The translations under genes were made by a program, and so were the position numbers. From the IMG/VR virus record IMGVR_UViG_3300009093_000035, positions 124,001-188,000 of that record: a stretch of DNA of 64,000 bases; one strand, given 5' to 3'. Every line of letters begins with the position of its first letter. The first letter of the stretch is position 1. The notes beneath the pieces are model-generated. The model searched no databases, had not been told where the DNA came from, and worked only from the letters and a program-made list of their open reading frames with translations. Positions 5,475 through 62,495 of the stretch are shown piece by piece.

Positions 5475-5772
5475 TCTGTCCGAGGTAACGACCGAGAGAA
5501 GGGTCGCTACACTCCTTACGCCCACTCGGGGCGAGCGATAACGCTCGATCGAGGCGCCGACGTCGCGGTTGCAAATTTTTCGTAACCTTTCTCGATCGAT
5601 CGACTTCGGAAGGATTTTCGGACACTTCCGAGCCAAAAATCGAATTCCAAAATTCGCTGCTGTAGTAGGCCCGGAATTAGCTAGCGGTAGGGGCTCCTGG
5701 GCTTAGATAGGCCCAGTTCCGGAGTTCCCCCCTGGACCTCTTGGTTAAGACCCTACTCACAAAGGACTATCC

Positions 5773-6057
5773 ATGACCCTCGATTCCGCTCGTGTGTCCC
5801 ACCCCTCGACCAACGACCAGAACGTCTCCACCCCCGCTCCGGTGAAGACGAGACCGCGGTCGAGGGAAGCGAAGACGCTCTCGTACCTGAAGAGGCTCCA
5901 CTCTCTCCAGGCGTCCTCCCACGACGTCGCCCGCTACCTCGATCTTCCGAGCCCCTGGGGCCCGGCTCAGGCGGTCGCTTCTCTGGAGAAGCTGATCCGC
6001 GAGAAGAAGGTGAAGAAGGTGAAGTCGGGCGGAGAGACGAGATACCTCGCTCGCTGA
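5773..6057 (+). CDS. Small basic protein, possible winged-helix DNA binder
   Basis: AAGGA SD; helix-turn-helix-like spacing followed by the wing-like KVKKVKSGGETRY. One of very few plus-strand genes. Confidence 0.55.
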   Translation: MTLDSARVSHPSTNDQNVSTPAPVKTRPRSREAKTLSYLKRLHSLQASSHDVARYLDLPSPWGPAQAVASLEKLIREKKVKKVKSGGETRYLAR

Positions 6058-6076
6058 TCCATTCGTCCGAGGGGGG

Positions 6077-6274
6077 CTACAACCTGAGTCCGGGGATCGC
6101 CCAGTCTAGCCATCTCCGGACAAAGAAGACGGGAACGCATACCTCGTCCCCGTACCCGCCGCCGGGTCCTACGACCAGACACCTCACCCCATACAGGTCT
6201 ATGTACGTCCCGGTCGGGATAGGGATCTCGTGGAGCGTCGTCGCGGCGTACCACCTTGCCGTTTCGTCATCCAT
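6077..6274 (-). CDS. Hypothetical protein
   Basis: 65 aa, overlaps the stop of the upstream minus-strand ORF. Confidence 0.45.
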   Translation of the reverse strand: MDDETARWYAATTLHEIPIPTGTYIDLYGVRCLVVGPGGGYGDEVCVPVFFVRRWLDWAIPGLRL

Positions 6275-6689
6275 CCAAGAACGCCTTCAGCCTCGCGAGG
6301 AAGCCTCGGTCCACTCCCGGCAGGTGTGAGCGGCAAGCTCGTCCGTAAGGTTGAGGCTTCTTCGGTAGAATGGGGGCGTTGTCTTCGGTCTTCGAGAGCT
6401 TCTTCGGCTTCTCTTTTTCGACCGGCGTGTGCCAGGCGATCTCGGCGTCGGCCCCACAGCAACAATGCTGGTCCGCCAAGAAGTCGGGATCCTTCGTGAT
6501 GATCAGAGAGGAAGACCCCTCGCCCGAGCGCCTCTGCTCGACCGTCCCGGTTTCCGGGTACGGTTCCGCCTGACGTCGGGCGAGGTCCTCAGCGTCTTTC
6601 TCCCAGGTCGAGGGATCTCCGAGGCGCGAAAGAGCTTCCTCTCGCGAGATCTTCCTTCCCTCCAGGTTGGGATCGAGCGGCTTCGTCAT
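6267..6689 (-). CDS. Hypothetical protein (CCCG...CRSH possible metal site)
   Basis: 140 aa; GGCGTAA motif 9 nt upstream. Confidence 0.6.
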   Translation of the reverse strand: MTKPLDPNLEGRKISREEALSRLGDPSTWEKDAEDLARRQAEPYPETGTVEQRRSGEGSSSLIITKDPDFLADQHCCCGADAEIAWHTPVEKEKPKKLSKTEDNAPILPKKPQPYGRACRSHLPGVDRGFLARLKAFLDG

Positions 6690-6706
6690 ACGACGAAGTT
6701 ACGCCC

Positions 6707-6913
6707 TCACTGACCTTCGGGCGAAGGAACCGACCGTCCCTCGACGGTCGGACCCGAGACGGCTCCCGTCACCGGATCTCGGTTCAGGAAGAAAGTCGGC
6801 CGACCTTCCATATCGATGAAAGCGATCCAGGTCCGGTCTTCGGGCTCGATCCAGCCCTGCCAACCGCCGACCGCCACAGGATCCGAGTATCTCTTCACGA
6901 TGATGTTGTTCAC
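6707..6913 (-). CDS. Hypothetical protein
   Basis: 68 aa, GGAG SD before the GTG. Confidence 0.6.
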   Translation of the reverse strand: MNNIIVKRYSDPVAVGGWQGWIEPEDRTWIAFIDMEGRPTFFLNRDPVTGAVSGPTVEGRSVPSPEGQ

Positions 6914-7208
6914 GGGGATCTCCTAGTTGTGAGGAAGATCCACGAACATCCATCGTGGGTCGCTCGAACTGTACCCGCCTAGTCGGGCCTCTTCAAGTAG
7001 TAACGCCTGTGAACCCCGACCCCGTCAGAGGCGAGAATCTCCCCGCGCTTCCGAAGCCTCTCCAAGGACTCCGCGCAGAGCTTCCACCCCCAGACGCACT
7101 CCTTCCAGGAAGGTTGCTGGTCGAAGCTCAGGTACGGGTAGCTCTGGAGACACTTCAAGACGGACCGGTCGATGATTCGATCGACGGCTTCCGTCGCCTG
7201 CTCTCGCG

Positions 7209-7421
7209 TCAAGGGACCTCCGGGAAACTTCGGTTGTACAGCTCCAAGGCCTGAGTGAGGAGACGCTGCTTCCAGGACAAGTCGTCCTCGTCGGGAGCCT
7301 CCGCGGCGGCCTCGATCGCGGTCCGATTTGCGACGACCCAATTGAGAACGGCCTGGTACTTCGCCGCCCTCTCGGTCTGAATCAATCGAGCCGCGCGTTG
7401 GGTCCAGTGACGACTGCTCAT
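7209..7421 (-). CDS. Hypothetical protein
   Basis: 70 aa, helical; GGCGTAA upstream. Confidence 0.55.
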   Translation of the reverse strand: MSSRHWTQRAARLIQTERAAKYQAVLNWVVANRTAIEAAAEAPDEDDLSWKQRLLTQALELYNRSFPEVP

Positions 7422-7448
7422 GGCCTAGAAGGCCATTACGCCTTGAGG

Positions 7449-9173
7449 TCAGTAGCCGATCGCAGCGCGACGATTCGTGAAGAACGTCGACTGACCCGAG
7501 GTCGTGAGGTGGAGCCCGTCCCCGGCGAGATCACCGGTCGAGTACATCGACGCCCCGCTGATGATGGTGACGTTGACTCTCCCCACGGAGGCCACGGCGT
7601 TCGTCTGAGCCGTCACGAACTGAGCGAAGGTCTGGCCCAACCCGTTCGTCGAGATGTCCGTACGGGGACCGAGGGTCTGTACGAAGACGTGGGTGAAGTA
7701 GGGCGCGACGAGCGTCAGAAGCTGGGTGAGGGCTGTCTGGTAGTCGGAGACGAGAGCCCACTGAGAGAGGCCGAAGTCATTCGTTCAGATCTGGATCAGA
7801 AGCTCGTTCGTCACGGTCCCATCCGCGAGCGCGATCAACGCGTTCGCCATGGCGGTAACGGACGGGTATCGGATCGTGCTCAGCGTCTTCAGCGAGTAGA
7901 TACCCGCCGTCATCTCAGTCGTACGACCCGGGTAGGCATCGCGCGTGAGCATCGAAACGCCGTCGTTCTGGAAGAAGGCGGGGCTCGGGGATGCGTTCTG
8001 GCCGAGGTTGATCGAGTCGCCGATCTCGATGAGACGACGCGTCGGGGTACCCGGAGGCGCGAAGGTCATCGTGCGAGTCGGAGGAAGCCAGATCTGGGAA
8101 AGGTAGTTGCCCGCGTTCGGCGAAGGCGCTCGGTAGCTCTGGGGGCCGACTTCCAACTCGACCGTCTTCACAGTCCCGCCGGTTCCGAGTGAGATCAGGG
8201 GGTAGGCGATCGTCCCCACGTCCACGACGTTCTTCGATCCGCCGTTGATGCGGTAGGCGATCGTGTACTGGATCGTCGTGGTGACTGCGACGGTGAGAAG
8301 CTGGAACTCCTCGGCGTCGGTCGTGAAGAGAAGACGTGCGTACGAAGACGGGGCCTCGTACAGACCGGGGACCACGGTAGTCGGCTCCGTATCCACGTAG
8401 GGGACGCCGACGAGGAGCTGCTCGGTCGTACCGCTCGCCGCAGCGAGAAGCTGGGAGAGCTGAAGCTCGTCGGCGTCGCTCAGCTCCGCCGGGAACAGGA
8501 CGATGAACCGAACGGTCATCGCCGCGAAGGTTCCGGCCGAAGCGTTCACGCCTCCGAGAGCTACCGGCGTCGAGGGAACCACCAACCCGGCGACGCTCGT
8601 AGAGCCCCCGAGAAGGGACCCGAAGAGATCCGTTCCGTTCAGACGCTGGGGACGTACTGCGTTCACCCCGTTCGCGAACGTGCAGCGAGCGCTGTAGATA
8701 CCCCAGCCATCGCTGTACTTCGCGCTCTGGTACTCGTTGATGTTCGGACCGGTCTTCACCGCGATTGCGCCGACGTGAAGGCTGTTGCGGCAGTAGAGAC
8801 CGATGTAGTCGGTCGTACTACCCGCGTTCACCATGTACGACTCGATACCGCCGCCGGTCGCCTTCCCGACCATCACCATCGTGTAGCCGGCCGCGCTCGC
8901 GAAGAACCCGGTGGACCCCAACATCTTGTTGGCCACCCCGTCGAAGACCATGTTCGACCCGACGAGAGTCGGTCGAGCCGTCGTCCCGGTTCCTGCGGTG
9001 AACGCGGATCCTCCGGTACGAGGCGTCCACGACGTACACCTCTGGCCGGTCTCGAAGACCGTGCCGAACAAGGAGTCGAGTAGGATTCCGGACCGCGCCG
9101 AAACGAAGGCCGTGAGAGGGCCAATCGTGTTCTGAGCGGCCCTACCCGCGGCGAGGCCAGGACGGAACGCCAT
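7449..9173 (-). pseudogene. Lectin-like beta-sandwich plus SGNH/GDSL esterase, interrupted by one in-frame TGA at 7785-7787 (nonsense allele or readthrough)
   Basis: Block I IGDSI, block III IQI*TND and block V DGLH are all in one frame. The frame stays open for 111 codons after the TGA, to the stop at 7449. Confidence 0.75.
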
Positions 9174-9176
9174 CGT

Positions 9177-9617
9177 TCAGCTCACTGGCGTGACGAGGAC
9201 GATCTTGTTCGGGACGTCGATTCGAACGAGCCACGACCCCGCGGCAGCGTTCGCGCTCCCGAAGAGCGTGTAGTCGGAGTTGAGACCACCTGGGGTCGTC
9301 CAACCGGCCGAACCGCCTGAAGTGACGTCGATCGTGATCCCGAAAGCGGCGGTGTTCGTCTTCATAACCGTGAAGGCCATCGAAGACGGAGCCACTCTCG
9401 CGTCGATCTTCCGAGTCGCCGTCGGGGTGAACTGGACGATCGGCTCGTTTGCGTTGAAGATCGCGAGAGCCGAGTAGTCCGCGTCATGAGCCGCAGGCGG
9501 GTTCGCAATCGAAGTCGCGTTCGCCGCGACGTCCGAAGTCCCGAGAGCGCCGATCGCGTCCCGAGCGCTCTGCTGAGTAGCTCCGATAGCCTGGAAGAGT
9601 TTTCGGGGGGATGCCAT
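9177..9617 (-). CDS. Putative virion accessory protein with N-terminal PRKLFQAIGATQQSARDAI module
   Basis: Ala/Thr/Gly-rich and beta-rich; N-terminus shared with 11586..13046; late motif upstream. Confidence 0.7.
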   Translation of the reverse strand: MASPRKLFQAIGATQQSARDAIGALGTSDVAANATSIANPPAAHDADYSALAIFNANEPIVQFTPTATRKIDARVAPSSMAFTVMKTNTAAFGITIDVTSGGSAGWTTPGGLNSDYTLFGSANAAAGSWLVRIDVPNKIVLVTPVS

Positions 9618-9634
9618 ACCCCCTACGGACCCTT

Positions 9635-9648
9635 ATAGGCTAGCCAAC
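9635..9648 (-). promoter_or_regulatory. Putative late promoter motif GTT-N7-CTAT
   Basis: 17 nt upstream of the ATG at 9617. Confidence 0.55.
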
Positions 9649-9651
9649 CTG

Positions 9652-9975
9652 TCAGAGATTGGGATCCGACTTCGTCCGCGCGCGAAGAAGACGCCGCGCC
9701 ATGTGACGAGACAAGGTGTCCCCGATCTGGGCCGTCTTGTCCCCGAACTTGTACGGGGGTGGGTGGCGCTCCATGTCCTGGACGATCTTCTCCATCGTCC
9801 CGAACGGAACCTCGTCTCTCAGGAGCTGCCAGATCAGGGAGGCGACCTGGTCCTCTACCTGCCTCATCGTGACGTTGGCGACTGCGATCGCCACATCTTT
9901 CGCTACTCGGGCCGCCACCGCAGCCCGGATACTTTTCGAACGGGCTTTCCTCGAACGAGTCTTCTTCATGGACAA
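9652..9975 (-). CDS. Hypothetical basic protein
   Basis: 107 aa in the minus-strand gene string. Confidence 0.55.
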   Translation of the reverse strand: MSMKKTRSRKARSKSIRAAVAARVAKDVAIAVANVTMRQVEDQVASLIWQLLRDEVPFGTMEKIVQDMERHPPPYKFGDKTAQIGDTLSRHMARRLLRARTKSDPNL

Positions 9976-9977
9976 CC

Positions 9978-10400
9978 CTACCTCGCGGAAAGAGCTTCCT
10001 GGTAGAGCATCTCGCCCTCCCAGACCTTCGTCTGATTCCGGTTCCAGGAGACGTCGCCCGTCTCTCCGACGCGGAAGACACAGGCCCAGCAGTTCCGGTT
10101 GTTCTTGTCGAAGATGTAACCAGGAGCCTCGACCGCCGAAGCGTGTAGCTCCTGATGGAACTTACCCTCCCAGGTCTTCTCCGCAGGAGCCTTCGAAGCC
10201 CCGAGAAGGAAGCGGTTGTTGAGACCGATGATCCGGGGAAAGTCCCGATCGGCCGTCAGGACTTCGGCTTTCCCGGTGTTCGGATCTACCCAGCGAGCGG
10301 CGCACAAACCGCACTCGCACCGGGTCCACCGTTCCAGGAGCCCGCGGATGTCTCCGCAGCGAGTGCAGTAGAGGAGCTTCAAGGATCTCCCTCTCGCCAC
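9978..10400 (-). CDS. Hypothetical Cys-motif protein
   Basis: CTRC...CECG; 140 aa. Confidence 0.65.
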   Translation of the reverse strand: MARGRSLKLLYCTRCGDIRGLLERWTRCECGLCAARWVDPNTGKAEVLTADRDFPRIIGLNNRFLLGASKAPAEKTWEGKFHQELHASAVEAPGYIFDKNNRNCWACVFRVGETGDVSWNRNQTKVWEGEMLYQEALSAR

Positions 10401-10723
10401 TCCGCCTTCACCCCGGCCTGGAACGAACTCCCCTGAATGTTGAGGTTCGTATGGAGAGGCAGGACGATAGAATCGGTGAAGAAGTAGGTCCCAGGAGCGA
10501 GTTGGACCGTGTCTCCGGAACGAGTGGCCTTCAGAGCCCCGTTCAAGGTACGGAAAGGCCTCTTCAGAGACCCTCGACGACCGGTCGAGTCATCCCCACG
10601 CGGGTCGGCCCAACACGTCTGAGGCCTACGGAGGTAGACCCATAGAGCGTAGAAGGTGTAGAAGACCCCAGCCAGACAGAGCGAGAGAGCGATGAGAAGT
10701 CCGCTCATCGCAGCTGGGACCAA
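10379..10723 (-). CDS. Membrane-anchored protein carrying a beta-helix N-cap motif (DUF1565-like)
   Basis: N-terminal TM helix, then GDDSTG..GSLKRPFRTLNGALKA..GDTVQLAPGTY. Confidence 0.6.
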   Translation of the reverse strand: MVPAAMSGLLIALSLCLAGVFYTFYALWVYLRRPQTCWADPRGDDSTGRRGSLKRPFRTLNGALKATRSGDTVQLAPGTYFFTDSIVLPLHTNLNIQGSSFQAGVKAEWREGDP

Positions 10724-10962
10724 CCGCGAAGGTTGACTCCCCTAGACCAACCCGGAGTCGGGTAGAGACGCGGACGCCCCATGACTCCCTGACGCTTCGA
10801 AGGCGGATTCATCGGGATCACCGGTCCGTGGGCGTTCACCGGCGTCGACCCGCAAGAGCGGCAGGTCGGGGTCGGGGGATAGATCCCATACCAGACCTCC
10901 GGAACGCAGACCTGACCGCCGCAGTTCCCGCACGTGCCTCTCAGATGTACGCCCATGACCAA
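10705..10962 (-). CDS. Small zinc-finger protein
   Basis: CGNC...CRSC. Confidence 0.55.
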   Translation of the reverse strand: MVMGVHLRGTCGNCGGQVCVPEVWYGIYPPTPTCRSCGSTPVNAHGPVIPMNPPSKRQGVMGRPRLYPTPGWSRGVNLRGWSQLR

Positions 10963-11010
10963 CTCGCTTTCTCGGGCCTAGCCCTACCTCGACTTTACGC
11001 CCGAGCACGA

Positions 11011-11280
11011 CTACTCGTCGATCCTCAAGGGGACCTTCGCCGAGACAATCGTCCCCAGAGGCCAGTGCTTCGGGTTCAATCTCAGAGCCTCCCCCGGCTC
11101 GAACCCGGCCTCCTCCTCCAAGTCCCCAGCGGCGCCCTCCCAGCGGCGCTCGCCGGTATCCTCGTCCTCGACGAGAGTGAACTCCCCACCGTTCTCGTAG
11201 GAGACCTTCTTGGGTCCCATCAGATACGGTGCTCCAGGAACTTCACCCTGATCTCCAGCTTCGCTGAACAGTCGGGGCAC
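11011..11280 (-). CDS. Hypothetical acidic protein (start uncertain, possibly near 11220)
   Basis: Minus-strand gene string. Confidence 0.45.
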   Translation of the reverse strand: MPRLFSEAGDQGEVPGAPYLMGPKKVSYENGGEFTLVEDEDTGERRWEGAAGDLEEEAGFEPGEALRLNPKHWPLGTIVSAKVPLRIDE

Positions 11281-11504
11281 GAGACGGTCGCATGAGTGGG
11301 GTCGATCTCGAAAGCCTTCTTCGGCTCGTCGCTCTTCAGGTCAGTCACGTCGATCAAGGACTCAACGCGAACCTTCTTCTGAAAGAAGTTGTGTTCGCCG
11401 TCGAACCAAGCGACGTGGGCGGTACGACAGTCCACTTCCTCGACCGTCATCACGGGTCCGCCGCTCTTCAACTGAACCTGATTGCCAGAAGTGATTTCGC
11501 TCAT
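11220..11504 (-). CDS. YodC/DUF2158-like protein
   Basis: GNQVQLKSGGPVMTV...AWFDG signature; start MSEIT at 11504 with GGAGG SD. Confidence 0.8.
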   Translation of the reverse strand: MSEITSGNQVQLKSGGPVMTVEEVDCRTAHVAWFDGEHNFFQKKVRVESLIDVTDLKSDEPKKAFEIDPTHATVSCPDCSAKLEIRVKFLEHRI

Positions 11505-11569: not shown

Positions 11570-11585
11570 AGAGTCTCCGAAGGAT

Positions 11586-14989: not shown

Positions 14990-15004
14990 GGACGACCTTA
15001 CGCC

Positions 15005-16369: not shown

Positions 16370-16389
16370 GGGAGACCTTTACGCCCGAG

Positions 16390-18856: not shown

Positions 18857-19092
18857 CTTACGCCTCAGGGAGCGCCTCTATGTGGAGGTCGATACTCTCC
18901 GTGAGGTAGAGGCATTCCGAGACGTCCCACCCTCGCTCCGCCATGACGCGGTCGGCATGAGCCCGGTCGGATACGACCACGACCTTGATCTGCTCGCCCT
19001 TTCTCCAGACAAGAGCACCTACGCGAGGAGACGTGTTCATGGCGAAGGCTGGGCCTGAGGTCACGAAGGACTTACGCCTCAGGGAGCGCCTC
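18857..19092. repeat. Exact 22-bp direct repeat CTTACGCCTCAGGGAGCGCCTC at 18857-18878 and 19071-19092
   Basis: Read directly from the sequence; brackets ORF 18858..19064. Confidence 0.95.
18858..19064 (-). CDS. Hypothetical protein
   Basis: 68 aa, ends EALPEA*. Confidence 0.55.
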   Translation of the reverse strand: MTSGPAFAMNTSPRVGALVWRKGEQIKVVVVSDRAHADRVMAERGWDVSECLYLTESIDLHIEALPEA

Positions 19093-19329: not shown

Positions 19330-19366
19330 CTGGGGACGGTAGCCTATTACGCTCCGAGACACGACG

Positions 19367-25737: not shown

Positions 25738-28700
25738 CTACCAATTCCACTCCAGGGACGAAGTCTTGTTGGAAGACCCCGTATCGATGTCCAAATCCAC
25801 CAAGTCCCCGATCGCATCCTGTACCTGGGACTCGTAAGGAGCCTTCTCTTCCGACTCGGACGAATCGCCCGGACCGGAGAAATCGGTGGGCTTCGACCTC
25901 GAAGGAGCCTTCTCCCGACGCATCTCGGTAAGAGGCTCTCTCTCGGAAGCCGCGTCTTCTACAGCTACGTTCGTGAGAAGCTCGGTGAAGACGTCGTGAG
26001 CGTTGCGGACGCGCTCCCGCTGAGACGCCTTCAATCCAGAGAAGGGCCAGACGTAGTCGGCCTCATCCTCAGAGTCTTCCCCGTCGTAGATCTTCCGCCA
26101 AGACGCCGCGAGCTTCCCGCTCGGGTCTACCGCCTCCAGCGCCTTCTCCATCTGCTCCGGTTGAAGCTTCCGGACCATGTCAGAGACGACTTCGGCAGAA
26201 GGCTCGGAACCGGGAACTCCCAACCCGGCCTCAATCATGTCGGAGACGTCTACACCGCTCTCCTTCAAAGACCGAAGCATCGTCCTCGTCCCCGTAGGAA
26301 TCGAAGACTCTGAGTCGTCGTCGCCCTCTAGGGCCGACGAAAGCTCCAAGGCTCGATGGTCGGCGGCGAGGTACCCCATCCGGTTCCGGAGCTGTTCCAG
26401 TTCCTTCTGGTCCGCCTCGCGCTCTTCGGGAGACTGGGGCGCTCCGCTGTTGGAGGAGAGCTTCTCTTCGAGGTCCGAGATCTTGTCCTGAGTATCCGTT
26501 CGAACCCGGGCGAAGGTCTTCTTCGTCTCAGCCCGATCGTCCGGAGACATCCCATCGAACCGCTCGACCGTCTTCGAGGTTCGCTCCTTCACCCCGGCCT
26601 TATCGATCGGAGACGAGGTGTCTCCGATGTAGGTCATCGGGTTACGGGCTGCCTCAGCCGTAGCCGCATGAACGAAGAACTTCGAGAAGCTCGACTGGAG
26701 TTCCTTCTCCACCTGGTCGCGCTTCTCGGTGAGCTGGAGGATCCGATCACCTTGGGTCTTCGCGAAGCTCCGCTTCAACCCCTCGATCTCGTCGTTGAGG
26801 TCTTCGTACTTCGACTTCAGCTTCTCGATCTTCTCTGGGGACGGGGGCTTCTTCGTCGAAGGGGAGTTCCCCGCGGCCATCCTACCGATCGCTTCGTCGC
26901 GATCTGCCGTCAGCTTCTCTACGAACTTCTCGGCGTCCTCGGTCGTCATCTGCTCGGTCAGAGAATCGAGCGTCGACTTCACGAAACGTGAGTCCTCCTT
27001 CGAGAAAGCCGGGGAGTCCTTCACGGACTGGGCCTTCTGATGGATCTCCGAGCGGCGGCGCTTATCCAGCTCCTCCGCCTCGTCCCTCTTGTACTGAGCC
27101 TCTTCCTCAGCGTCCGCGTCCTCTTGCTGCTTCTTCGGGTCGGGAGGCGCCTCCCCGGACTCAGGCTTCGGTTCTGGCTTTGGGGGCTTCGGAGGAAGGC
27201 CCTTCAGATCTCTCTTCCGGGCCTCTTCCTGCTCGCGCTTCTTCTTCCGAAGCTTGTCTTCCTTCGAGCCCTCTTCTTCGAACTCCTTCGCCTTCTCGGC
27301 CCACTCGGCGCGGATCCGCTTCTGTTCCTCGTCCGGGAGACTCTGGAACTTCACGTCTTTGTTGGTCTCTTTGTTGTGGAAGGTCTTCCCCTCCACGGAC
27401 TCCAGGAATTCGTCATCCTCTTCTGAGTCCAAGGCCAACAAGTACCGAGAGGCCACGCGACTCGGGGCCGTCATGAAGTAGGCCATCGCTACTCGAAGGG
27501 CGACCTTCTTGTAGTTCAGGGAGAGATCGTCGTCGGTGGCGTCGAGGTCCTTGTCCCCCGAGTCCACCCGGTGGTTCTGGAGATCTTTCCGAGGGGGCTT
27601 CTTCTTCGGCTCCGGCTTCAGAAGAGCTTCCGTCGCCTCGTCTTCCTTCTCTGCTTCGGTCTTCGTGGCGGACTTCGACTCCTTGAAGGAAGAGAGGATC
27701 GTCCCATCCTTCATGAAGGCGTCTTCGAGACCGGGGACCAGGTAGTCCGAACGAAGGGTCGCCTTCTCGTGGCCGACGATGTCCGCGACCTCTTCGAGGG
27801 CGTCCGCGAACTCCTTCTTCAGGATCTTGTCCCGCTCCTTCCGAGCGCGTGGGAGATCCGGGCCCTCTTTCCGCTGTTCGCGGAGGGCCTTGCACATCTC
27901 CTGATTCGCTCGGAGCCCGCGGATGTCCTTCGCGGTGATGTCGAACTCGCTGAGGTAGTCGTTCACCGCCTCCGGCTTCACCGTGTAGTCGTCCCGGCTG
28001 AGCAGGCAATCGTCGCCCTTCTTCCCCTCAGCCAGCTCCTTCAGGAGCTTCACGACCGGAGCCGACTCGACCACCTTCTCGTGCTTCACGCCGGACTTTC
28101 CGACGTACTTCAGGGTCGCTTTCGACCCAGAGAACGAGATGTGCTTCTTACGCCACCCCGTCACCCCGTAGTGGCCTTCTTCGGCCGACCCCTCATTCCC
28201 TACCCGCTCGCACGTCTCGTCCATCAGAGCGGCGGCGAGGGCGGGGAGAGCTACCTTCGGGTCCTTCGAAGAGATGTCCTTCTTGATCATCTTCCGAAGG
28301 TCGCTGAGGTCCTTCCGAAGACGTTCGATCCGTTCGGCCTTCTCCGAGTGCCGGTTCGCTACCTGGCGATCGCTGTACTCGTAGTGGACATTCCCCTCGT
28401 CGTCCTTCGTCTTGGACTTGTACCGAGCCGCTACGACAACGGCCGAGGCCAGTCTCGCGGAAAGGGGCGGGGGACAATCGACGTCATGACGAGCGACCGT
28501 AACCAGGTGGGGGACGCAAGACCTACCGTTCGACTCGATCCAGTCGGCGAACGTGCGTAGGTGGCCCAGGCGGTCTTCCCAGATCGCCACGCCTCGGATC
28601 GAAGGCTGCTTCGAGAGGATCTTCTTGATCGTCTCCAGCTTGAATCTCTCGGTATCCGTGTCTCCGGGGGACAGGTAGATCTCCTGGAAGTCGAGACCGG

Positions 28701-43723: not shown

Positions 43724-44448
43724 GCTGCTTCTCCTAGAAAGACACGTCTCATGTTTCGAATCCCGCCAGCGGACCAGACCTCTCCGGGATCTTTGCCTCG
43801 GTACCGGTAGTCGGTAGCTCTCAGACCGGACTTCCGTAGGAGGGTGAGAGCGCCAGGATGTTTCTTTCCTGTCTTCTCATCTTCCCAACCGAGCGTTGCT
43901 TTACGCCCCGTCGCATCGTTGTCGTACACCATATACACTTGGTTCTGAAGAAACCTTGTAAGGAAGTCCAGGTGAGACCGAGAAAGACGCGCGGTCAGCG
44001 TCGCTATCACGACGTCGGTATCCGGGACTATCATCCTCATCGGAAGAAGGTCGAAGATCCCTTCAGTGACCCAGACCGAACCCCCCTCCCACATCTTCCT
44101 CGCTGCCTCAGGGGCGTTCACCATGACCGGATTCCATCTCGCTTCCGGAGTCCGGAACTCTGAGATGGCTTTCTCGGCCATCGACCGGGCCTCAACCCCG
44201 ATCAGGCCTCCGCTCGGCGACAGGAGCGGGTAGACCAATCGACCAGTCCACCGCTCTCCACGATTTCCGTACCGCTCTCGAAAGAGGGGGTCTGGAGCCG
44301 TGGTATTCGCCGGGACCCACTCTACGAATCGGAAGTGCTCGATGGCCTCTGGAGTAGCCCCTCTCCCGAGGAGGTACCCCTCGGCTTCTTCAGACAGAGA
44401 GAGATTCCGGAGATGGTCTGATAGCCAGAGCGCGATCTCCGAGGTCAC
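43720..44448 (-). CDS. DnaG-type primase, catalytic/TOPRIM core only
   Basis: YLLGRG, RLVYP, VTEGIFD, YDND..G, KDPGE; no N-terminal CHC2 zinc finger. Confidence 0.85.
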   Translation of the reverse strand: MTSEIALWLSDHLRNLSLSEEAEGYLLGRGATPEAIEHFRFVEWVPANTTAPDPLFRERYGNRGERWTGRLVYPLLSPSGGLIGVEARSMAEKAISEFRTPEARWNPVMVNAPEAARKMWEGGSVWVTEGIFDLLPMRMIVPDTDVVIATLTARLSRSHLDFLTRFLQNQVYMVYDNDATGRKATLGWEDEKTGKKHPGALTLLRKSGLRATDYRYRGKDPGEVWSAGGIRNMRRVFLGEAA

Positions 44449-54608: not shown

Positions 54609-54693
54609 GGCTACTCTCTCCTGTTTGAACGAGGGCTAGTGTCATTCACTGATATGAAGGGACACCCTCTGGACATTCCTCTTTACGCTCTAA

Positions 54694-55907: not shown

Positions 55908-58287
55908 GTGCTCCTGCCAGTAGTCGATCGCAGAGAAGCGTGTTGCGGGCGCTCTCCCTCTCGTTGTTGACCGCTCGAATCAGAGCCGTCCTCGTCCCAG
56001 CGAGAACGACCTTCTTCTTGGCCCGAGTGACGGCCGTGTAGAGAAGGTTCCGCTGGAGCTGATGGGCGAAGGAATCCACCACGGGCATGATGATCACGTC
56101 GTACTCTTGTCCCTGGGACTTGTGTACGGTGATGGCGTACGCCAGTCGCAAGATCAACGGTACCTTCGCGAAAGGAACCTTGATGTGGAGGACCGGCGGA
56201 CCGTGGATCTTGATCTCGACCTCTTTCGCCTTTCGGTCGATCGTGACGACCTTCCCGACGTCTCCGTTGAAGACGCTGAGCTTGTAGTCGTTCCGGACGA
56301 CCATGATCCGGTCGTCCTCGCGGATGATCTCGGATCCGATCTTCATCTCGCGAAGAGACGGCTGCTTCGGGTTGAGTAGCTCCCGAAGGCGAGAGTTCAA
56401 CGTCGTAACTCCCACCGGACCGGAATGCCGAGGGGAAAGGACCTGGAAGGTGGTCGGGGCGAGGCCCGAACGAGAGGCGACCTGTGAGGCGGCGAAGAGC
56501 TTCTCGGCCGCCTTCACGATCAGCTCGGCGACCTGGTCTTCATCCCTCATCTCCATCAGAGCGAAGTCGGTCCCTCTCGGAGCTTCGGGGACCTCGCCGC
56601 GATGGATCGAATGGGCGGCGTGGATGATGGGGGAAGTATCGCTCTGACGGAAGATCTCGGTCAAAGCGACGGTCGGAAAGAGCTTCGAGGCGATCAGGTC
56701 TCGAAGAACGTTCCCGGGCCCCACGGAGGGAAGCTGGGCGGCGTCTCCTACGAAGACCAATCGGGCGTCCTGTCTCGTACAGGTCAAGATCCGATAGAGC
56801 AGGTGCTGATCCACCATCGAGGACTCATCCACGATGACGACCTCGGCGGGGTGGGGGTTGTCGATCGAGTAGCCCCACTCCTCCGCAGCCCCGTCGGTTC
56901 CGGATAGACCGCCCTCGCTGTCCCCCACGATTCCCGCGTAGGTAGAATCGCGGGAAGAGGAGGAGATACCGGCCGACTTGAAGGCTCGGTGGATAGTGGC
57001 AGCCGGAGCCCCCGTAACACTCGCTACGCGCTTCGCGGCGATACCCGTGGGGGCTACGACCAGGAAGGGGATCCCAGCCTCCTGCAGCAAGGTAACCGCC
57101 ATACGGAGGCTGGTGGTTTTACCGGTTCCCGGAAGACCCGAGATTATGGATACCGGCTGACAGACCGCGTTCCTAACGCCGTTGGCCTGCTCCGCCGAAA
57201 GGGAAATGGAGCCCGAAGCCCCGAAGCGCTCCAGAGCGAGATTGACGGCCTCCAGAAGGGTCGAGGCGACCTCGCTCTCCCCCAGGAGGGCCCGGATGTA
57301 GATCGCTTCGATCTCCGGCTTCATCTTCGCGTTCGCCGCGCGTTCCAGGAGGATCTCCGCGGCGTCGTGCTCGATCTTGTACGACCAGGGGTCGTAGATC
57401 GCAGTGAGGCCCTCTCGAACGAAGCGGTCGACGATCAACAAGTCCGCGTCGGCGAGAGTCTTGATAGCTCGGGCGATATCTCGATCTTGGAACTGGGAGT
57501 CGATCGACTTCACCCCGCTCAGCATCTCTCCCGTAGCCGAGTAGAGATGACCGAAACCTCTCCCCGATCGGCAAGAGTAGAGAACAGCCCCCTCGATTCG
57601 AGAGTGGTTCGTCGGGGACGTATCGAGACCAAGACGGATAGCGACCCCGTCAGCATCGTTGAACGTCACCCCATCGATCTGAACCAAGGCCCACGGATTG
57701 ACCGAGAGGACCTCTTGAGCCTTGTCTCCGAAGCGACCCCAGATCTGGCGAATCCTCCCCTGAGGAAGATTGAGGTCGTTCAGGAAGTCCAGAGCGCGGA
57801 AGTGGGCGCGGGCCGCCTGCCATCGACTATGGATGTGGAGAGCGGTGAACTTCGTGAGTCCGGGGATCGCCTCGATCTTCTCCGCGTCCGTGAGAGCCGT
57901 GGCTAGGTCTTCCCCGTAGGCCGCTCGGAGCTTGGCGGCGATCGCCGGGCCCACCCCTTGAGAGACGAGGATCTTCTCGCACGTATCCGCGTCCCAGTCC
58001 TTCTTCATGACCGGAGCGCGGAGAATCCGGAGCTGGCGTCCGTACTGAGGGTGGTTGTCCCACTTCCCCTCGAAGCCGAACCAAGAGCCCACCCCCACCG
58101 ACATCCCGGGGATATCCCCTCGGACCGTTACCACCCCTTCCGAGGCCATGTCCCCGAAGTCTGGTTCCTTCTTTTCCTCGGTTTTGTCGGAGGCAGCCGA
58201 AGCATCCAAGACCATCTTCAGGATGTAGAACGCCTTCGCCTCGTTCTCGAAGATGACGCTGTGTACGCGACCCGAGTAGTAGTTCAT
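55891..58287 (-). CDS. recD2: RecD2-like SF1B helicase
   Basis: HPQYGRQ, NPW, GLPGTGKTT, APTGIAAKR, VDESSM, GDAAQLPSVGPG, AITVHKSQGQEY, LYTAVTRAK. Confidence 0.95.
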   Translation of the reverse strand: MNYYSGRVHSVIFENEAKAFYILKMVLDASAASDKTEEKKEPDFGDMASEGVVTVRGDIPGMSVGVGSWFGFEGKWDNHPQYGRQLRILRAPVMKKDWDADTCEKILVSQGVGPAIAAKLRAAYGEDLATALTDAEKIEAIPGLTKFTALHIHSRWQAARAHFRALDFLNDLNLPQGRIRQIWGRFGDKAQEVLSVNPWALVQIDGVTFNDADGVAIRLGLDTSPTNHSRIEGAVLYSCRSGRGFGHLYSATGEMLSGVKSIDSQFQDRDIARAIKTLADADLLIVDRFVREGLTAIYDPWSYKIEHDAAEILLERAANAKMKPEIEAIYIRALLGESEVASTLLEAVNLALERFGASGSISLSAEQANGVRNAVCQPVSIISGLPGTGKTTSLRMAVTLLQEAGIPFLVVAPTGIAAKRVASVTGAPAATIHRAFKSAGISSSSRDSTYAGIVGDSEGGLSGTDGAAEEWGYSIDNPHPAEVVIVDESSMVDQHLLYRILTCTRQDARLVFVGDAAQLPSVGPGNVLRDLIASKLFPTVALTEIFRQSDTSPIIHAAHSIHRGEVPEAPRGTDFALMEMRDEDQVAELIVKAAEKLFAASQVASRSGLAPTTFQVLSPRHSGPVGVTTLNSRLRELLNPKQPSLREMKIGSEIIREDDRIMVVRNDYKLSVFNGDVGKVVTIDRKAKEVEIKIHGPPVLHIKVPFAKVPLILRLAYAITVHKSQGQEYDVIIMPVVDSFAHQLQRNLLYTAVTRAKKKVVLAGTRTALIRAVNNERESARNTLLCDRLLAGAHGDEG

Positions 58288-58769
58288 CGGCGAGGGTTCT
58301 TGAGCTTGTTCAAGGTTTCGATGAGTCCGATCAGGTCCTTCGAGAGGTCGTCCGGAGAGAGGGGACCCTTCAGATCGAGCTTCGAAGGCATCACGAAGAA
58401 CTTGCATCGGTGACCCACGAGGTATTCGAGAGGAGGGAAGTTCAGTCCGGGGATCTCCCACCAAGAACCCTTCTTCCGAAGGACGCCTGTACCATACATA
58501 CAGAGCAAGCTCTTCCAGGGATCGATGTGGTGTCCGTACCCGCAAACCCCCGAAGATTGAAGGGCGCAAGATCCAAACCCCCAAACATCTCTCTTCCAGG
58601 TAGGTCCCGTAGGCCCCATATCTGGAAGATGAGCGATCAGGGCATACACCTCTTGACCCTCAAACACGGAGAAATCGAGGGTCTCGGCCTGACCGTCTTT
58701 CTCACAAAGCAAGAGGGCCCCGTCCGTGAAGACGAGACCCTCTGACACGATGTTAGGAATCGAACTCAC
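58284..58769 (-). CDS. Hypothetical protein
   Basis: 161 aa, ATGA-coupled to recD2. Confidence 0.6.
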   Translation of the reverse strand: MSSIPNIVSEGLVFTDGALLLCEKDGQAETLDFSVFEGQEVYALIAHLPDMGPTGPTWKRDVWGFGSCALQSSGVCGYGHHIDPWKSLLCMYGTGVLRKKGSWWEIPGLNFPPLEYLVGHRCKFFVMPSKLDLKGPLSPDDLSKDLIGLIETLNKLKNPRR

Positions 58770-58803
58770 GATTCCTTGTTACGCTTCTGAAAGGAAAAGG
58801 GAA

Positions 58804-60732: not shown

Positions 60733-60758
60733 GTGTCAACCCCGTGGTTTGAAGAACG

Positions 60759-60792
60759 AAAAAAAGGGACGAGTCTGGGGATCCCGTCCTTC
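60759..60792 (-). terminator. Terminator-like hairpin in the nrdJ leader
   Basis: AGGACG-N13-CGTCCC followed by T7, about 26 nt before the nrdJ ATG. Confidence 0.65.
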
Positions 60793-60893
60793 TTGAGAAT
60801 CAAGAGGCAGGTCCTCAGTCTACCAACTCCACACTCATCGAATGGAGGCGAAGTAGGTAAAGACCGAGGCACATTTACCAAGAAACCGAGACA

Positions 60894-61847
60894 TCACCCC
60901 GCCAGCAGATTCAGCAACGCGGACTCTAGGTACGAGAAGGGGGAGATGGAACCCTGGAACACGAGTGTCTGAGATTCCGCTACGACACGAATCAACTTCG
61001 CACACCCGGATACCTTCCACTGAAGAGCGCACGGGAGAATCTTGTTCTCCCAGTACCAGGGATTCGCCCCCACACTTCTCGCCGCCGACTCGGGAGACAT
61101 CTTCAGTTCGGAGAGGTGTGCTGCCTGTAGCCATCGAGTCAGCGCCGGGGTTAGAACCCTACCGCACAACTCGATCGTTGAGTCACCACCGCGAGAATTT
61201 TTGTACTTGGTCATCTCCAACACGAAACGGCGACGATCTCTTGATCCGAGCGCGTCCGCGATCGCGTTCCCGTCCGTCTCGGCGATTGGTGCCATCGTCT
61301 CTCGAAGATGAGCCGCTGTGATCGTCGCGGCGGAGCCCGCGAGTAGACTCGCCTTCTGGACTTCGAAGGAGATCATGCCCAGGTCGATCCCGACTCTCTT
61401 CACCAGGGAGAGCGCGAGGTCGAAGTCCAGAGGGTTCCCTCGGGTCCGAGCTTCACTCACGGCGAAGTTCGCCGCGTACTCGTCCATCTTGTAGAAGGCA
61501 GGGAGGGTGAAGATCTTCGTCTTCGCCTTCGGCACGAGATCGAAGACCGGGCCGGAAGGCTTGTCTTCCTCCGAGACGAGAAGGAAAGTGATCGAGGGGT
61601 CTTCGGACGCGATGTGCTGGGTGAGCGTAGGTAGCGGGAGCTTCTCCGGACTCCTCACCACCACTAGGTTCTGAGAGGTGAACATCACCGACATGGAGAA
61701 CACGGTCTCCAAGGCATCCTTGTCGCCCCCCTCTATCTCGGTGACCGCCCATCCCTCCGAGGCGCGAGTTGAGCTGATCTTCGAGATCAGTCTTCGCCTC
61801 TGGTACTCGTCGGACCCAGCCACCAGCAATACAGGTTCGGCTTTCAC
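60894..61847 (-). CDS. holA: DNA polymerase III delta subunit
   Basis: PVLLVAGSDEY, SVMFTSQNLVVV, LVKRVGIDLGMISFEVQK, IT..HL, YLESALL terminus. Confidence 0.8.
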   Translation of the reverse strand: MKAEPVLLVAGSDEYQRRRLISKISSTRASEGWAVTEIEGGDKDALETVFSMSVMFTSQNLVVVRSPEKLPLPTLTQHIASEDPSITFLLVSEEDKPSGPVFDLVPKAKTKIFTLPAFYKMDEYAANFAVSEARTRGNPLDFDLALSLVKRVGIDLGMISFEVQKASLLAGSAATITAAHLRETMAPIAETDGNAIADALGSRDRRRFVLEMTKYKNSRGGDSTIELCGRVLTPALTRWLQAAHLSELKMSPESAARSVGANPWYWENKILPCALQWKVSGCAKLIRVVAESQTLVFQGSISPFSYLESALLNLLAG

Positions 61848-62476
61848 TAGACCCCCACCAAGAAAGCCGCGAGGACTCGGGCCGGGGTAAGGGCCGTCCG
61901 CCGCGTGTGTAGATCACGTACGGAGCCCCAGAGAGCTAGGAGGTCGTTCCGTAGGTTCGGATCCGAAAGACCCTCCTGGATGGCTTCTACGAGCGCGAGG
62001 AGCACAAACTCCTCGTCCCCCTTCGACTCCTTCAGCTCGGAGACGATCTCGGACCAGTTCTTCCCCAGGTAGGCCTTCAGGAGCCGGTCGGCCTGGGTAC
62101 GGCTAAGCGAGACCCGCTCGTCCACCCCCGGAACGAACGTGTGGAGGGTCCGAGACCGAAGAGTGGGGATCACCCCACCGAAGTCCCACGCCCAGAGGAA
62201 GGGTCGAATCTTCCCCGGTACGAACTCCTCGATCGTCTTGAGAAGGACGTCCCCCACCTCGGGAGTGATCTCGTCCAGAGGACCGACCACTACACCCCAA
62301 GGCTTCTCTCCGATCGGAGTCTGACTCAGAAGAGACACCAACTCTCGGGCGTCCCCCTTCTTCATAGCCTCCCCAGAAGTACCGAAAGGAAGAACTAGCC
62401 CATATTCCTTGGCCTCATTCTTCGCTGCGGCTTCTGACCCCGGGCCGTGATAGAGTGATACGGATCCGATCTCCAT
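61847..62476 (-). CDS. Truncated DNA polymerase III delta-prime-like subunit
   Basis: LYHGPG, DVLLKTIEE, VIPTLRSR. Confidence 0.7.
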   Translation of the reverse strand: MEIGSVSLYHGPGSEAAAKNEAKEYGLVLPFGTSGEAMKKGDARELVSLLSQTPIGEKPWGVVVGPLDEITPEVGDVLLKTIEEFVPGKIRPFLWAWDFGGVIPTLRSRTLHTFVPGVDERVSLSRTQADRLLKAYLGKNWSEIVSELKESKGDEEFVLLALVEAIQEGLSDPNLRNDLLALWGSVRDLHTRRTALTPARVLAAFLVGV

Positions 62477-62495
62477 GAGAACGGAACCTTACGCC

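What the first reader, a model, noticed from the sequence alone, without database searches (positions are those of the whole stretch)
5516..62495. Second motif GGCGTAA just before many small non-structural genes, often with no Shine-Dalgarno
Seen on the minus strand at 5516-5522, 6699-6705, 7436-7442, 10995-11001, 14998-15004, 16379-16385, 18858-18864, 19072-19078 and 62489-62495, with GCGTAA/ACGTAA/GAGTAA variants near 15900, 19347, 47729, 54684 and 58779. Most are 7-14 nt from the next start codon. CTTTACGCCCGAGC is identical at 10993 and 16377. Known: CGT(A) is a typical ECF-sigma -10 element. Inference: a -10-only early/middle promoter giving leaderless or near-leaderless mRNAs, so each small ORF acts as its own cassette. 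In a few cases the TAA is also the upstream stop codon.
Basis: partly seen in the sequence, partly recalled or inferred. Interest (0 to 1): 0.6.

Follow-up and report, generated by a model that had tools for sequence, protein, structure and literature searches.

The report
Single-box promoter before leaderless phage genes
The seven-letter word GGCGTAA sits 7-12 letters in front of many non-structural genes of an uncultivated giant phage and is most likely a one-piece promoter that starts transcripts at or next to the start codon; this is a new example of a known phage strategy, not a new kind of element.

Summary
All nine listed GGCGTAA copies are there, all on the gene strand. In the whole 248.6-kb phage record it is the most over-represented intergenic 7-mer: 23 copies against 1.5 expected. 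Only RGCGTAA is enriched; every other one-letter variant sits at background. No -35 box accompanies it. TAA is an upstream stop codon in only 3 of 31 copies.

About half of the copies lie 7-14 nt before a start codon with no Shine-Dalgarno. The rest lie 26-54 nt upstream, and most of those have a GGAG-type Shine-Dalgarno in between.

Relatives repeat the pattern more sharply. In G002, 32 of 57 copies have ATG 7-12 nt downstream, with the peak at 8 nt. In G009 it is 18 of 28. In G002 a copy also ends 10 nt before a tRNA gene, which argues for transcription rather than translation. Four of six motif-bearing G000 genes have motif-bearing G002 orthologues.

A sigma-70-family gene occurs in only two of 27 relatives, and these are the two strongest users. 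It is not found in this record.

Best reading: a single-element promoter of a non-structural (early or middle) gene class that gives leaderless or short-leader RNAs. No transcription start data exist. The ECF assignment fails because there is no -35 box.

The parts
62489..62495 (-). GGCGTAA copy directly after the TAG stop of gene 62496-64115. ATG follows 12 nt downstream at 62476 with no Shine-Dalgarno. The gene behind it is 61847-62476, 209 aa, clamp-loader delta'-like.
   Evidence: The orthologous G002 gene has the motif 11 nt before its ATG.
58779..58785 (-). AGCGTAA copy. GTG follows 9 nt downstream at 58769, opening a 161-aa ORF (58284-58769).
54683..54689 (-). AGCGTAA copy 74 nt upstream of the ATG at 54608 (245-aa gene 53871-54608), with an AGGAGAG Shine-Dalgarno in between. 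This would be a leadered transcript.
   Evidence: The G002 orthologue has GGCGTAA 59 nt upstream.
19347..19353 (-). AGCGTAA copy 92 nt after the stop of the major head gene (19445-20323). What it drives is unclear.
19072..19078 (-). GGCGTAA copy inside a perfect 22-nt repeat. GTG lies 7 nt and ATG 31 nt downstream, opening a 60-68-aa ORF with weak coding signal.
18858..18864 (-). GGCGTAA copy, the second copy of the 22-nt repeat. Its TAA is also the stop of the small ORF upstream. ATG follows 10 nt downstream at 18847 (DUF4419 protein, 394 aa, 17663-18847).
16379..16385 (-). GGCGTAA copy. GTG follows 9 nt downstream at 16369, opening a 90-aa zinc-ribbon ORF (16097-16369) with a weak Lar-like match and a poor coding score.
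14998..15004 (-). GGCGTAA copy directly after the TGA stop of gene 15005-15259. ATG follows 8 nt downstream at 14989 (90 aa).
10995..11001 (-). GGCGTAA copy 32 nt before TTG and 38 nt before ATG of an 83-85-aa ORF (10705-10962).
7436..7442 (-). GGCGTAA copy. ATG follows 14 nt downstream at 7421 (70 aa, 7209-7421), and a small hairpin lies in between.
6699..6705 (-). GGCGTAA copy. ATG follows 9 nt downstream at 6689 (140 aa, 6267-6689).
5516..5522 (-). GGCGTAA copy at the head of a minus-strand block. It is followed 3 nt later by the separate two-box element and, 41 nt downstream, by the ATG of the NUDIX gene (5043-5474).
5485..5512 (-). A different promoter-like element with two boxes, GTGTAG-N16-TCGTTAC, ending 10 nt before the ATG at 5474. 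It is not part of the GGCGTAA family and is listed because it abuts copy 5516.
   Evidence: 15 copies in the record.
28148..28154 (-). GGCGTAA inside the 1078-aa gene. It is not conserved in relatives and is a chance copy, not part of the system.
43901..43907 (-). GGCGTAA inside a conserved reading frame, where it reads GGG CGT AAA. It is a chance copy, not part of the system.

Best explanation
RGCGTAA (GGCGTAA, less often AGCGTAA; cGGGCGTAAcgt in relative G002) is most likely a single-element promoter. It is a -10-region box with a G-rich upstream extension and no -35 box, read on double-stranded phage DNA by the host's multisubunit RNA polymerase carrying a sigma factor that has not been identified. 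That factor could be a phage-encoded sigma-70-family protein, as found in relatives G002 and G009, or a host holoenzyme modified by the phage.

Transcription would start about 7-9 nt after the box. Where the start codon sits there, the mRNA is leaderless or has a leader of a few nucleotides and needs no Shine-Dalgarno. Where the box lies further upstream, the leader usually carries an ordinary Shine-Dalgarno. The box heads short transcription units of a non-structural (early or middle) class: replication, nucleotide metabolism and small accessory genes.

Shown: enrichment, strand and position rules, lack of a -35 box, lack of Shine-Dalgarno in the close class, conservation at orthologous genes, and adjacency to a tRNA gene. 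Inferred: that transcripts start there, which polymerase or sigma reads the box, and the timing class.
For: (1) Specificity. There are 23 intergenic sense-strand copies against 1.5 expected, the top 7-mer. Only R at position 1 is tolerated.
(2) No other conserved position from -45 to +30 in G000 or G002, apart from cG just upstream and cgt just downstream in G002.
(3) Association with gene starts. Five of 15 gaps between divergent genes carry a copy, always pointing at a gene. None of 16 gaps between convergent genes does, and none of 89 tightly coupled gene junctions does.
(4) Fixed spacing, measured without annotation. ATG lies 7-12 nt downstream in G000 9/31 (P=4e-5), G002 32/57 (P=2e-22, mode 8 nt), G009 18/28 (P=1e-13) and G011 6/10. 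GCGTAA is the top 6-mer followed by ATG in G000, G002 and G009.
(5) Close copies have no strong Shine-Dalgarno: 0 of 29 genes in G002 (any-SD Fisher P=3e-5) and 0 of 10 in G000 (P=0.05). Most distant copies (16-74 nt) have a GGAG-type Shine-Dalgarno in between. No TTG start occurs in the close class.
(6) G002's only tRNA gene has the box ending 10 nt before its 5' end. G011 has the box 12 nt before a tRNA-like 5' half. A tRNA is not translated, so the signal acts on transcription.
(7) Orthologue test between G000 and G002: 94 pairs, with the motif upstream of 6 and of 16 genes, shared in 4 against 1 expected, P=0.007, while the flanking DNA cannot be aligned.
(8) Gene class. The box precedes the DNA polymerase, helicases, thymidylate kinase and sigma genes in G002, and clamp-loader-like, NUDIX, DUF4419 and small ORFs in the window. 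The head module (19.4-34.5 kb) holds only the intragenic chance copy at 28148, and no minus-strand copy lies in the 44 kb of very large genes at G000 53-97 kb.
(9) No multisubunit or T7-like polymerase gene was found in the record, and no polymerase beta gene in five relatives, two of them 92% complete. The host polymerase must therefore be used.
(10) A sigma-70-family gene with regions 2 and 4 occurs in only 2 of 27 relatives' records, G002 and G009. These are the two strongest motif users. It is absent from four near-complete non-users. In G002 its own gene has the box 10 nt before its ATG.
(11) Precedents. phiEco32 has single-element promoters with starts 6-8 bp downstream (PMC8948821). A -10-like signal about 12 nt before the start codon is the signature of leaderless genes (PMC3160421).
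Against: There is no transcript 5'-end evidence. The one RNA run found is held only as contigs and covers only head-gene pieces of relatives.

The record itself has no detectable sigma region 2 and no homologue of the G002 sigma. Neither do its closest large relatives G001 and G007, so the sigma link may not hold for this lineage.

That sigma has a region 4, which normally reads a -35 box, and no -35 box exists here.

The T expected at the last position of a classical TANNNT box is present in only about 30-40% of copies.

A spacing of 7-12 nt is also what a ribosome-binding element would show, and some G000 copies read TAAGG, which is weakly Shine-Dalgarno-like.

Spacing in G000 is looser than in G002. 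Several small ORFs behind window copies have weak coding scores.
Confidence: 0.65

Rival explanations
1. It is a translation-initiation element on the mRNA that stands in for the Shine-Dalgarno. It would be recognised by the ribosome or by a phage-encoded factor and would place the start codon 7-12 nt downstream.
For: The spacing of 7-12 nt (mode 8) equals the usual Shine-Dalgarno-to-start distance. Genes of the close class have no Shine-Dalgarno. Some G000 copies read TAAGG, which could pair with the very 3' end of 16S rRNA (my own knowledge of the anti-SD tail; contexts).
Against: GGCGUAA is not complementary to the CCUCC core, which the other genes of the same phage clearly use through their GGAG-type Shine-Dalgarno sequences. 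About half of the copies lie 16-74 nt from the start, most with their own Shine-Dalgarno, where such an element would be idle. In G002 the usual continuation is cgt, not GG. The box precedes a tRNA gene by 10 nt.
Confidence: 0.1
2. It is an RNA processing or RNA-protein binding site. A sequence-specific endoribonuclease or regulator would recognise RGCGUAA in polycistronic RNA and cut or bind just upstream of the next gene.
For: The motif is strand-specific, intergenic and usually just after an upstream stop codon. Two copies lie inside the tmRNA gene.
Against: Copies occur at the heads of transcription units in divergent gaps, where no upstream same-strand gene exists. The fixed 8-nt distance to ATG is not expected for a cleavage site. 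One tmRNA copy is conserved in G001, a relative without overall enrichment of the motif, so it reflects tmRNA sequence and not motif function.
Confidence: 0.08
3. It is an operator-type DNA site for a phage regulator, by analogy with the one-orientation 'stoperators' of Cluster A mycobacteriophages, and not itself a promoter.
For: It is a many-copy asymmetric site in short intergenic gaps, in one orientation relative to transcription, and sometimes overlaps stop codons. A clade-wide protein with a sigma region-4-like helix-turn-helix is encoded in the window.
Against: Seven specified bases are few for a repressor site. The 8-nt register to ATG and to a tRNA 5' end is not explained. The helix-turn-helix protein is present in all 12 relatives tested, users and non-users alike, so it does not track the motif.
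Confidence: 0.07
4. It is a by-product of base composition or of stop-codon context (TAA stops next to G+C-rich gene ends) and has no function.
For: The motif contains TAA, and a few copies do supply the upstream stop.
Against: The enrichment is 15-fold over a second-order model of the intergenic DNA itself. All one-letter variants are at background. TAA is the stop in only 3/31, 8/57 and 5/28 copies. The ATG register is reproduced in four genomes.
Confidence: 0.02

Closest known systems
[quoted passage not shown]
   Same: Both have one conserved box of 8-9 bp and no -35 box. phiEco32 transcripts start 6-8 bp downstream, and here start codons and a tRNA 5' end lie 7-12 nt downstream. In both, promoter positions are kept between related phages while the consensus or its use changes: phage 7-11 uses a two-box promoter at the same places, and G000 has an extra two-box class that G002 lacks.
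   Different: The sequence is different. gp36 lacks region 4, whereas the only candidate sigma here (G002, G009) has one. No biochemical evidence exists here. Here the box is placed so that many RNAs would be leaderless.
T4 late promoters (TATAAATA at -10, read by gp55 with gp33 and the sliding clamp); from my own knowledge
   Same: Both are -10-region-only promoters used by the host polymerase after phage reprogramming. The phage encodes its own clamp and clamp loader.
   Different: The T4 box is A+T-rich and serves late structural genes. Here the box is G+C-rich and avoids the structural modules. No gp55 or gp33 homologue was sought or found.
Extended -10 class middle and late promoters of Thermus phage P23-45, favoured when phage gp39 blocks the sigma region 4 contact with the -35 box (PMC7403470)
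   Same: Both are promoters without a -35 box read by the host holoenzyme, with an upstream extension of the -10 box. This offers a route that needs no phage sigma.
   Different: The extension here is GGCG rather than TG, and the downstream T of the -10 hexamer is not conserved. No gp39-like factor has been identified.
Bacterial leaderless-gene promoters: TANNNT about 12 nt before the start codon, common in Actinobacteria and Deinococcus-Thermus (PMC3160421)
   Same: The T of TAA lies 11 nt before the ATG at the modal spacing. There is no Shine-Dalgarno, and starts are ATG or GTG only. Host-type TAGGGT followed by ATG 5-6 nt later also occurs in G002.
   Different: The conserved part here is GGCG+TAA, not T-A-N-N-N-T. 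The element is specific to certain phage lineages.
ECF sigma promoters (two boxes, -35 with AAC and -10 with CGT; often self-regulated; PMC7776599, for 'bipartite' and 'autoregulated', the consensus from my own knowledge)
   Same: CGTAAn ending 7 nt before the presumed start resembles an ECF -10 box. In G002 the sigma gene carries the box in front of itself.
   Different: There is no -35 element at all. The sigma found in relatives looks like a group-3 sigma-70 protein rather than a compact ECF sigma.
Start-associated sequences of Cluster K mycobacteriophages and stoperators of Cluster A mycobacteriophages (from my own knowledge)
   Same: These are many-copy, one-orientation short motifs in intergenic gaps, close to start codons (start-associated sequences) or stop codons (stoperators).
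   Different: Start-associated sequences contain a GGAG Shine-Dalgarno core, and stoperators are 13-bp repressor sites. Neither precedes tRNA genes or shows the split between Shine-Dalgarno-free close copies and distant copies that mostly carry a Shine-Dalgarno.

Membership tests
Single-element (-10-region-only) phage promoter | One conserved short box and no conserved -35 box | tested here: met
   Information content is flat from -45 to -7 in 31 G000 sites and 57 G002 sites.
Single-element (-10-region-only) phage promoter | Transcripts start 6-9 nt downstream of the box | not testable with these tools
   The only RNA run is held as contigs and covers head-gene pieces only. Indirect support: ATG lies 7-12 nt and a tRNA 5' end 10 nt downstream.
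Single-element (-10-region-only) phage promoter | Oriented with, and placed upstream of, transcription units, including unit heads | tested here: met
   Five of 15 divergent gaps carry a copy and all point at a gene. None of 16 convergent gaps does. 23 sense against 3 antisense intergenic copies.
Single-element (-10-region-only) phage promoter | Dependence on a phage-encoded or phage-modified sigma | tested here: inconclusive
   The sigma-70-family gene occurs only in G002 and G009, the strongest users, out of 27 relatives. It was not found in G000, G001 or G007, which are 45-57% complete.
Leaderless-mRNA gene architecture | A -10-like signal about 10-12 nt before the start codon and no Shine-Dalgarno | tested here: met
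   Modal spacing is 8 nt after TAA. No strong Shine-Dalgarno in 29 G002 genes or 10 G000 genes.
Leaderless-mRNA gene architecture | The RNA 5' end coincides with the start codon | not testable with these tools
   No read-level RNA data are available.
ECF sigma promoter | Two boxes: a conserved -35 (AAC-type) 16-18 nt upstream of a CGT-type -10 | tested here: not met
   No conserved position in the -35 region.
ECF sigma promoter | A cognate ECF sigma gene in the genome | tested here: not met
   No Sigma70_r2 hit over the cut-off in the 248.6-kb record, which is only 56% complete. The relatives' sigma matches generic sigma-70-family models, RpoH/RpoS-like.
Shine-Dalgarno ribosome-binding site | Complementarity to the CCUCC anti-SD core | tested here: not met
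   GGCGUAA has no GGAG or GAGG core. Other genes of the phage use GGAG-type sites. Most distant copies carry a separate Shine-Dalgarno.
Sigma-70 -35/-10 promoter (TTGACA-N17-TATAAT) | Match to both hexamers | tested here: not met
   One match in 5000-20500 against 1.9 expected, and none at the motif.

The most novel reading that the evidence does not exclude
A subgroup of a very widespread clade of uncultivated giant phages may run its whole non-structural gene programme from a private single-box promoter. The box, (G)GGCGTAA, would be read by a phage-encoded sigma-70-family factor that has a region 4 but uses no -35 box, and it is placed so that dozens of mRNAs are made leaderless. Box usage would be gained and lost between close lineages together with that sigma.
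Probability: 0.3. Interest if true: 0.6.

Novelty: new member of a known kind. Interest (0 to 1): 0.5.

Why it matters
Giant phages known only from metagenomes have almost no experimentally grounded regulatory annotation. A sharply defined promoter word with a fixed register to start codons has several uses.

- It gives a way to call transcription units and true start codons in these genomes, many of which lack a Shine-Dalgarno and are easily mis-called.
- It separates non-structural from structural gene classes without expression data.
- It points to hosts that translate leaderless mRNA well.
- Together with a candidate sigma present only in the strongest users, it offers a testable sigma-promoter pair for in vitro transcription.

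It also shows promoter turnover between relatives whose head protein is about 90% identical.

Tried and rejected
- RNA evidence. One soil metatranscriptome run held 5% of the words. It is held only as contigs and lay only on head-gene pieces of relatives, so it gives no start-site information.
- Polymerase genes. No RNA polymerase beta or T7-type polymerase family was found in the record, and no beta in five relatives.
- Sigma in the record. Sigma70_r2 gives only a sub-threshold hit with an internal stop. The G002 and G001 sigma proteins find nothing by the genome search, tblastn or phmmer.
- Region-4 search. It found only a helix-turn-helix protein at 40373-40930. This is a core gene of all 12 relatives tested, so it does not explain a lineage-specific motif.
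- Relatives of the 394-aa protein and of the G002 sigma in IMG/VR by single-sequence search: none beyond the source contig.
- DNA alignment of motif sites to six relatives. Only three sites can be aligned, and all three are coding or tmRNA sequence, so no nucleotide-level footprint could be made. I used the orthologue test instead.
- Sigma-70 consensus and intrinsic-terminator scans of 5-20.5 kb: at chance level.
- Larger repeat or mobile cassette around the motif: none beyond a 22-nt duplicate.
- GNRA-tetraloop hairpin idea (GC-GUAA-GC): true for terminator-like hairpins in relatives L050 and L053, but the flanks in G000 and G002 are not complementary.
- Full-text search for the 7-mer: only primers and unrelated hits.
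- Rfam on the G011 tRNA-like stretch: no hit.
- Genetic code: no alternative code was needed. TGA, TAG and TAA all serve as stops.

Full report
CONTEXT. The window is bases 124,001-188,000 of a 248,579-bp linear IMG/VR virus record that CheckV rates 56% complete. It has 61% G+C. About 88% of genes lie on the minus strand. Forty-five tRNA genes and a tmRNA gene lie just right of the window. The window holds three parts. From 5 to 19.5 kb there is a stretch of small, mostly unknown genes. From 19.4 to 34.5 kb there is a head module with major head protein, protease, portal and large terminase. From 41 to 62 kb there is a replication block with clamp loader, sliding clamp, exonucleases and SbcCD-like genes. 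The head protein has 558 relatives in IMG/VR, the best 80 at 89% identity or more, on contigs of up to 619 kb. This is therefore a member of a widespread clade of giant phages. The standard genetic code fits: TGA, TAG and TAA all serve as stops.

THE OBSERVATION. All nine listed copies of GGCGTAA are present on the minus strand. There are two more at 28148 and 43901, and none on the plus strand: 11 found against 3.3 expected. The whole record has 28 minus-strand and 3 plus-strand copies. Within intergenic DNA read in the sense of the genes there are 23 copies against 1.5 expected from a second-order model, the most over-represented 7-mer. The other top words are tRNA arm sequences and a second motif described below. 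The recognition is sharp: GGCGTAA has 23 and AGCGTAA 8 intergenic sense copies, and every other single-letter variant has 0-5. TAA is the in-frame stop of a coding-like frame in only 3 of 31 copies, and TAA is the rarest stop codon. 43901 reads G-R-K in a frame conserved in G001, G002 and G009, and 28148 is not conserved. Of the five 'variants', three are AGCGTAA and belong to the family. The two near 15900 and 47729 are plain stop codons next to GGAG-type ribosome sites.

ANATOMY. No position between -45 and -7 carries information, so there is no -35 partner. The motif is tied to gene starts rather than gene ends. It occurs in 5 of 15 gaps between divergent genes, always pointing at a gene, and in none of 16 gaps between convergent genes or 89 overlapping or abutting gene junctions. 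Downstream there are two classes. About half of the copies lie 7-14 nt before an ATG or GTG with no Shine-Dalgarno. The others lie 26-54 nt upstream, and most of these have a GGAG-type site in between. Counted without any gene calls, ATG lies 7-12 nt after 9 of 31 copies, against 1.6 expected, P=4e-5.

RELATIVES. The motif is not clade-wide. It is enriched in G002 (266 kb, 64% G+C; 57 copies against 26 for the backwards control), G009 (28 against 13) and G011 (10 against 3), and more weakly in G005. It shows no overall enrichment in G001, or in the near-complete G003, G004, G015 and G024. G001 does give a weak signal in the ATG-spacing count (GCGTAA followed by ATG in 9 of 30 copies).

In G002 the consensus is cGGGCGTAAcgt, again without a -35 box, and the register is striking. 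ATG starts exactly 8 nt downstream in 15 copies and 9 nt downstream in 7; 32 of 57 fall within 7-12 nt (P=2e-22). G009 gives 18 of 28 (P=1e-13) and G011 6 of 10. A blind search for any 6-mer followed by ATG returns GCGTAA first in G000, G002 and G009. None of the 29 close-class genes of G002 has a strong Shine-Dalgarno (any-SD Fisher P=3e-5), and copies at 16-74 nt mostly do have one.

G000 and G002 are syntenic at 40-75% protein identity. Among 94 reciprocal-best pairs the motif precedes 6 G000 genes and 16 G002 genes, shared in 4 (1 expected, P=0.007). The shared cases are a helicase, an 822-aa protein, the 245-aa gene at window 53871-54608 and the clamp-loader-like gene at 61847-62476. The surrounding DNA cannot be aligned.

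TRANSCRIPTION OR TRANSLATION? The spacing alone would also fit a ribosome-binding element. Three things speak for transcription. First, G002's only tRNA gene (Leu-tag) has the box ending 10 nt before its 5' end (chance roughly 0.002). A remnant of the same arrangement survives in G009, and G011 has the box 12 nt before a tRNA-like 5' half. Second, most distant copies carry their own Shine-Dalgarno, which is what a promoter with leaders of variable length predicts. Third, the letters do not pair with the CCUCC core that the phage's other genes use. At the modal spacing the T of TAA lies 11 nt before the ATG. That is close to the position where TANNNT boxes of leaderless genes sit (PMC3160421). 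GGCG then falls where an extended -10 would lie. The second, two-box motif of this record also often ends 6-10 nt before ATG. G002 also has TAGGGT followed by ATG 5-6 nt later. Leaderless design therefore looks like a habit of these phages.

WHO READS IT? No multisubunit or T7-type polymerase gene is present in the record, and no polymerase beta gene in five relatives, so the host polymerase must be used. G002 encodes a 260-aa sigma-70-family protein with regions 2 and 4. A 70%-identical homologue is in G009 and in no other of 27 relatives' records, including four that are near-complete and do not use the motif. In G002 the sigma gene has the box 10 nt before its ATG. In both G002 and G009 the box also overlaps its stop codon and heads the next gene.

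This co-occurrence is suggestive but thin: 2 of 2, roughly P=0.03. G000 itself, and its closest large relatives G001 and G007, show no such gene in their 45-57% fragments. A host holoenzyme freed from its -35 dependence by a phage factor, as in Thermus phage P23-45 (PMC7403470), is an equally open route.

WHICH GENES? In G002 the box precedes thymidylate kinase, the sigma, a Dda-like helicase/exonuclease V, another helicase, the DNA polymerase and a photolyase-like gene. In the window it precedes a clamp-loader-like gene, a DUF4419 protein, a NUDIX hydrolase, a Lar-like zinc ribbon and unknown small ORFs. The head module holds only the intragenic chance copy at 28148, and there is no minus-strand copy in the 44-kb run of very large genes at G000 53-97 kb. 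'Non-structural, hence early or middle' is a fair inference. 'Each small ORF its own cassette' is not: about nine copies serve some 35 genes between 5 and 19.5 kb.

COMPARISON WITH KNOWN SYSTEMS. The closest documented case is phiEco32. It has a single-element promoter, tAATGTAtA, read by a phage sigma, with starts 6-8 bp downstream. Its relative 7-11 uses a two-box promoter at the same genome positions (PMC8948821). T4 late promoters (from my own knowledge) and the extended -10 promoters of P23-45 are further -35-less precedents. The ECF assignment fails its defining test, because ECF promoters are bipartite (PMC7776599) and no -35 box exists here. CGTAAn ending 7 nt before the presumed start does work like an ECF-type -10 box, so 'works like' stays open while 'is a member' does not.

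VERDICT. This is a real, sharply defined, lineage-specific signal. It is most probably a single-element promoter that yields leaderless or short-leader RNAs for non-structural genes (confidence about 0.65). It is a new consensus within a known kind of phage promoter. The step from sequence statistics to actual transcript starts, and the identity of the sigma, remain to be shown.

Noticed in passing
window 5485-5512 (-); G000 108.3, 108.8, 201-207 and 222-247 kb: A second, clearly two-box promoter-like motif, GAGTGTAR-N15/16-YCGTTAC. It has 15 copies in the record and none in G002. It often ends 6-10 nt before ATG, otherwise with a Shine-Dalgarno in between.
   Followed up: partly
G000 188,442-199,553 (just right of the window) and 224,337-224,412: 45 tRNA genes and a tmRNA gene. 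Two GGCGTAA copies lie inside the tmRNA gene; one is conserved in G001, which shows no overall enrichment of the motif.
   Followed up: partly
window 40373-40930 (-): A 185-aa protein with a sigma-70 region-4-like helix-turn-helix but no region 2, next to the clamp-loader genes. It is a core gene found in all 12 relatives tested and is a candidate clade-wide transcription factor.
   Followed up: partly
window 3620-5474 (-): A nicotinamide phosphoribosyltransferase gene (469 aa) directly follows a NUDIX hydrolase gene (143 aa). Together they look like an NAD salvage pair, headed by both promoter-like motifs in tandem.
   Followed up: no
window 19445-20323 (-): The major head protein is at least 89% identical in the best 80 of 558 matching IMG/VR contigs. 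The G+C content of those loci runs from 33% to 65%, an unusual degree of conservation across such compositional spread.
   Followed up: no
window 43720-44502 (-): An ORF with a near-zero coding score is nevertheless conserved at the DNA and protein level in G001, G002 and G009, so it is a real gene that simple gene finders would miss.
   Followed up: partly
window 18857-18878 and 19071-19092: A perfect 22-nt direct repeat that includes the motif, 214 nt apart, just downstream of the head gene. It is a local duplication of a motif plus a small ORF.
   Followed up: no
L133 (G011) 19700-19940 (-): A tRNA-like 5' half (acceptor, D arm and anticodon arm) begins 12 nt after the motif, breaks off, and is followed by a Cys-rich ORF. 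It may be an interrupted or intron-bearing tRNA gene. Neither ARAGORN nor Rfam calls it.
   Followed up: partly
G002 (L090-L103), many sites: G002 has TAGGGT followed by ATG 5-6 nt later (a host-type TANNNT leaderless arrangement) and a further TTCTAT motif, many of whose copies lie 14-25 nt before starts. It also has a paralogue family whose 3' ends share GGGTTTCGGTGCGCGCTGCGGGG.
   Followed up: no
L050 6735, L053 4796, L108 (G005) 9950: In some relatives GGCGTAAG sits in the loop of a terminator-like hairpin just after the head gene (L050, L053) or after the tRNA array (G005), possibly as a GUAA tetraloop. This is a different use of the same letters.
   Followed up: no
window 11562-13046 (+): A lone 494-aa plus-strand gene with no PHROG match lies inside the minus-strand block of small genes.
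   Followed up: no
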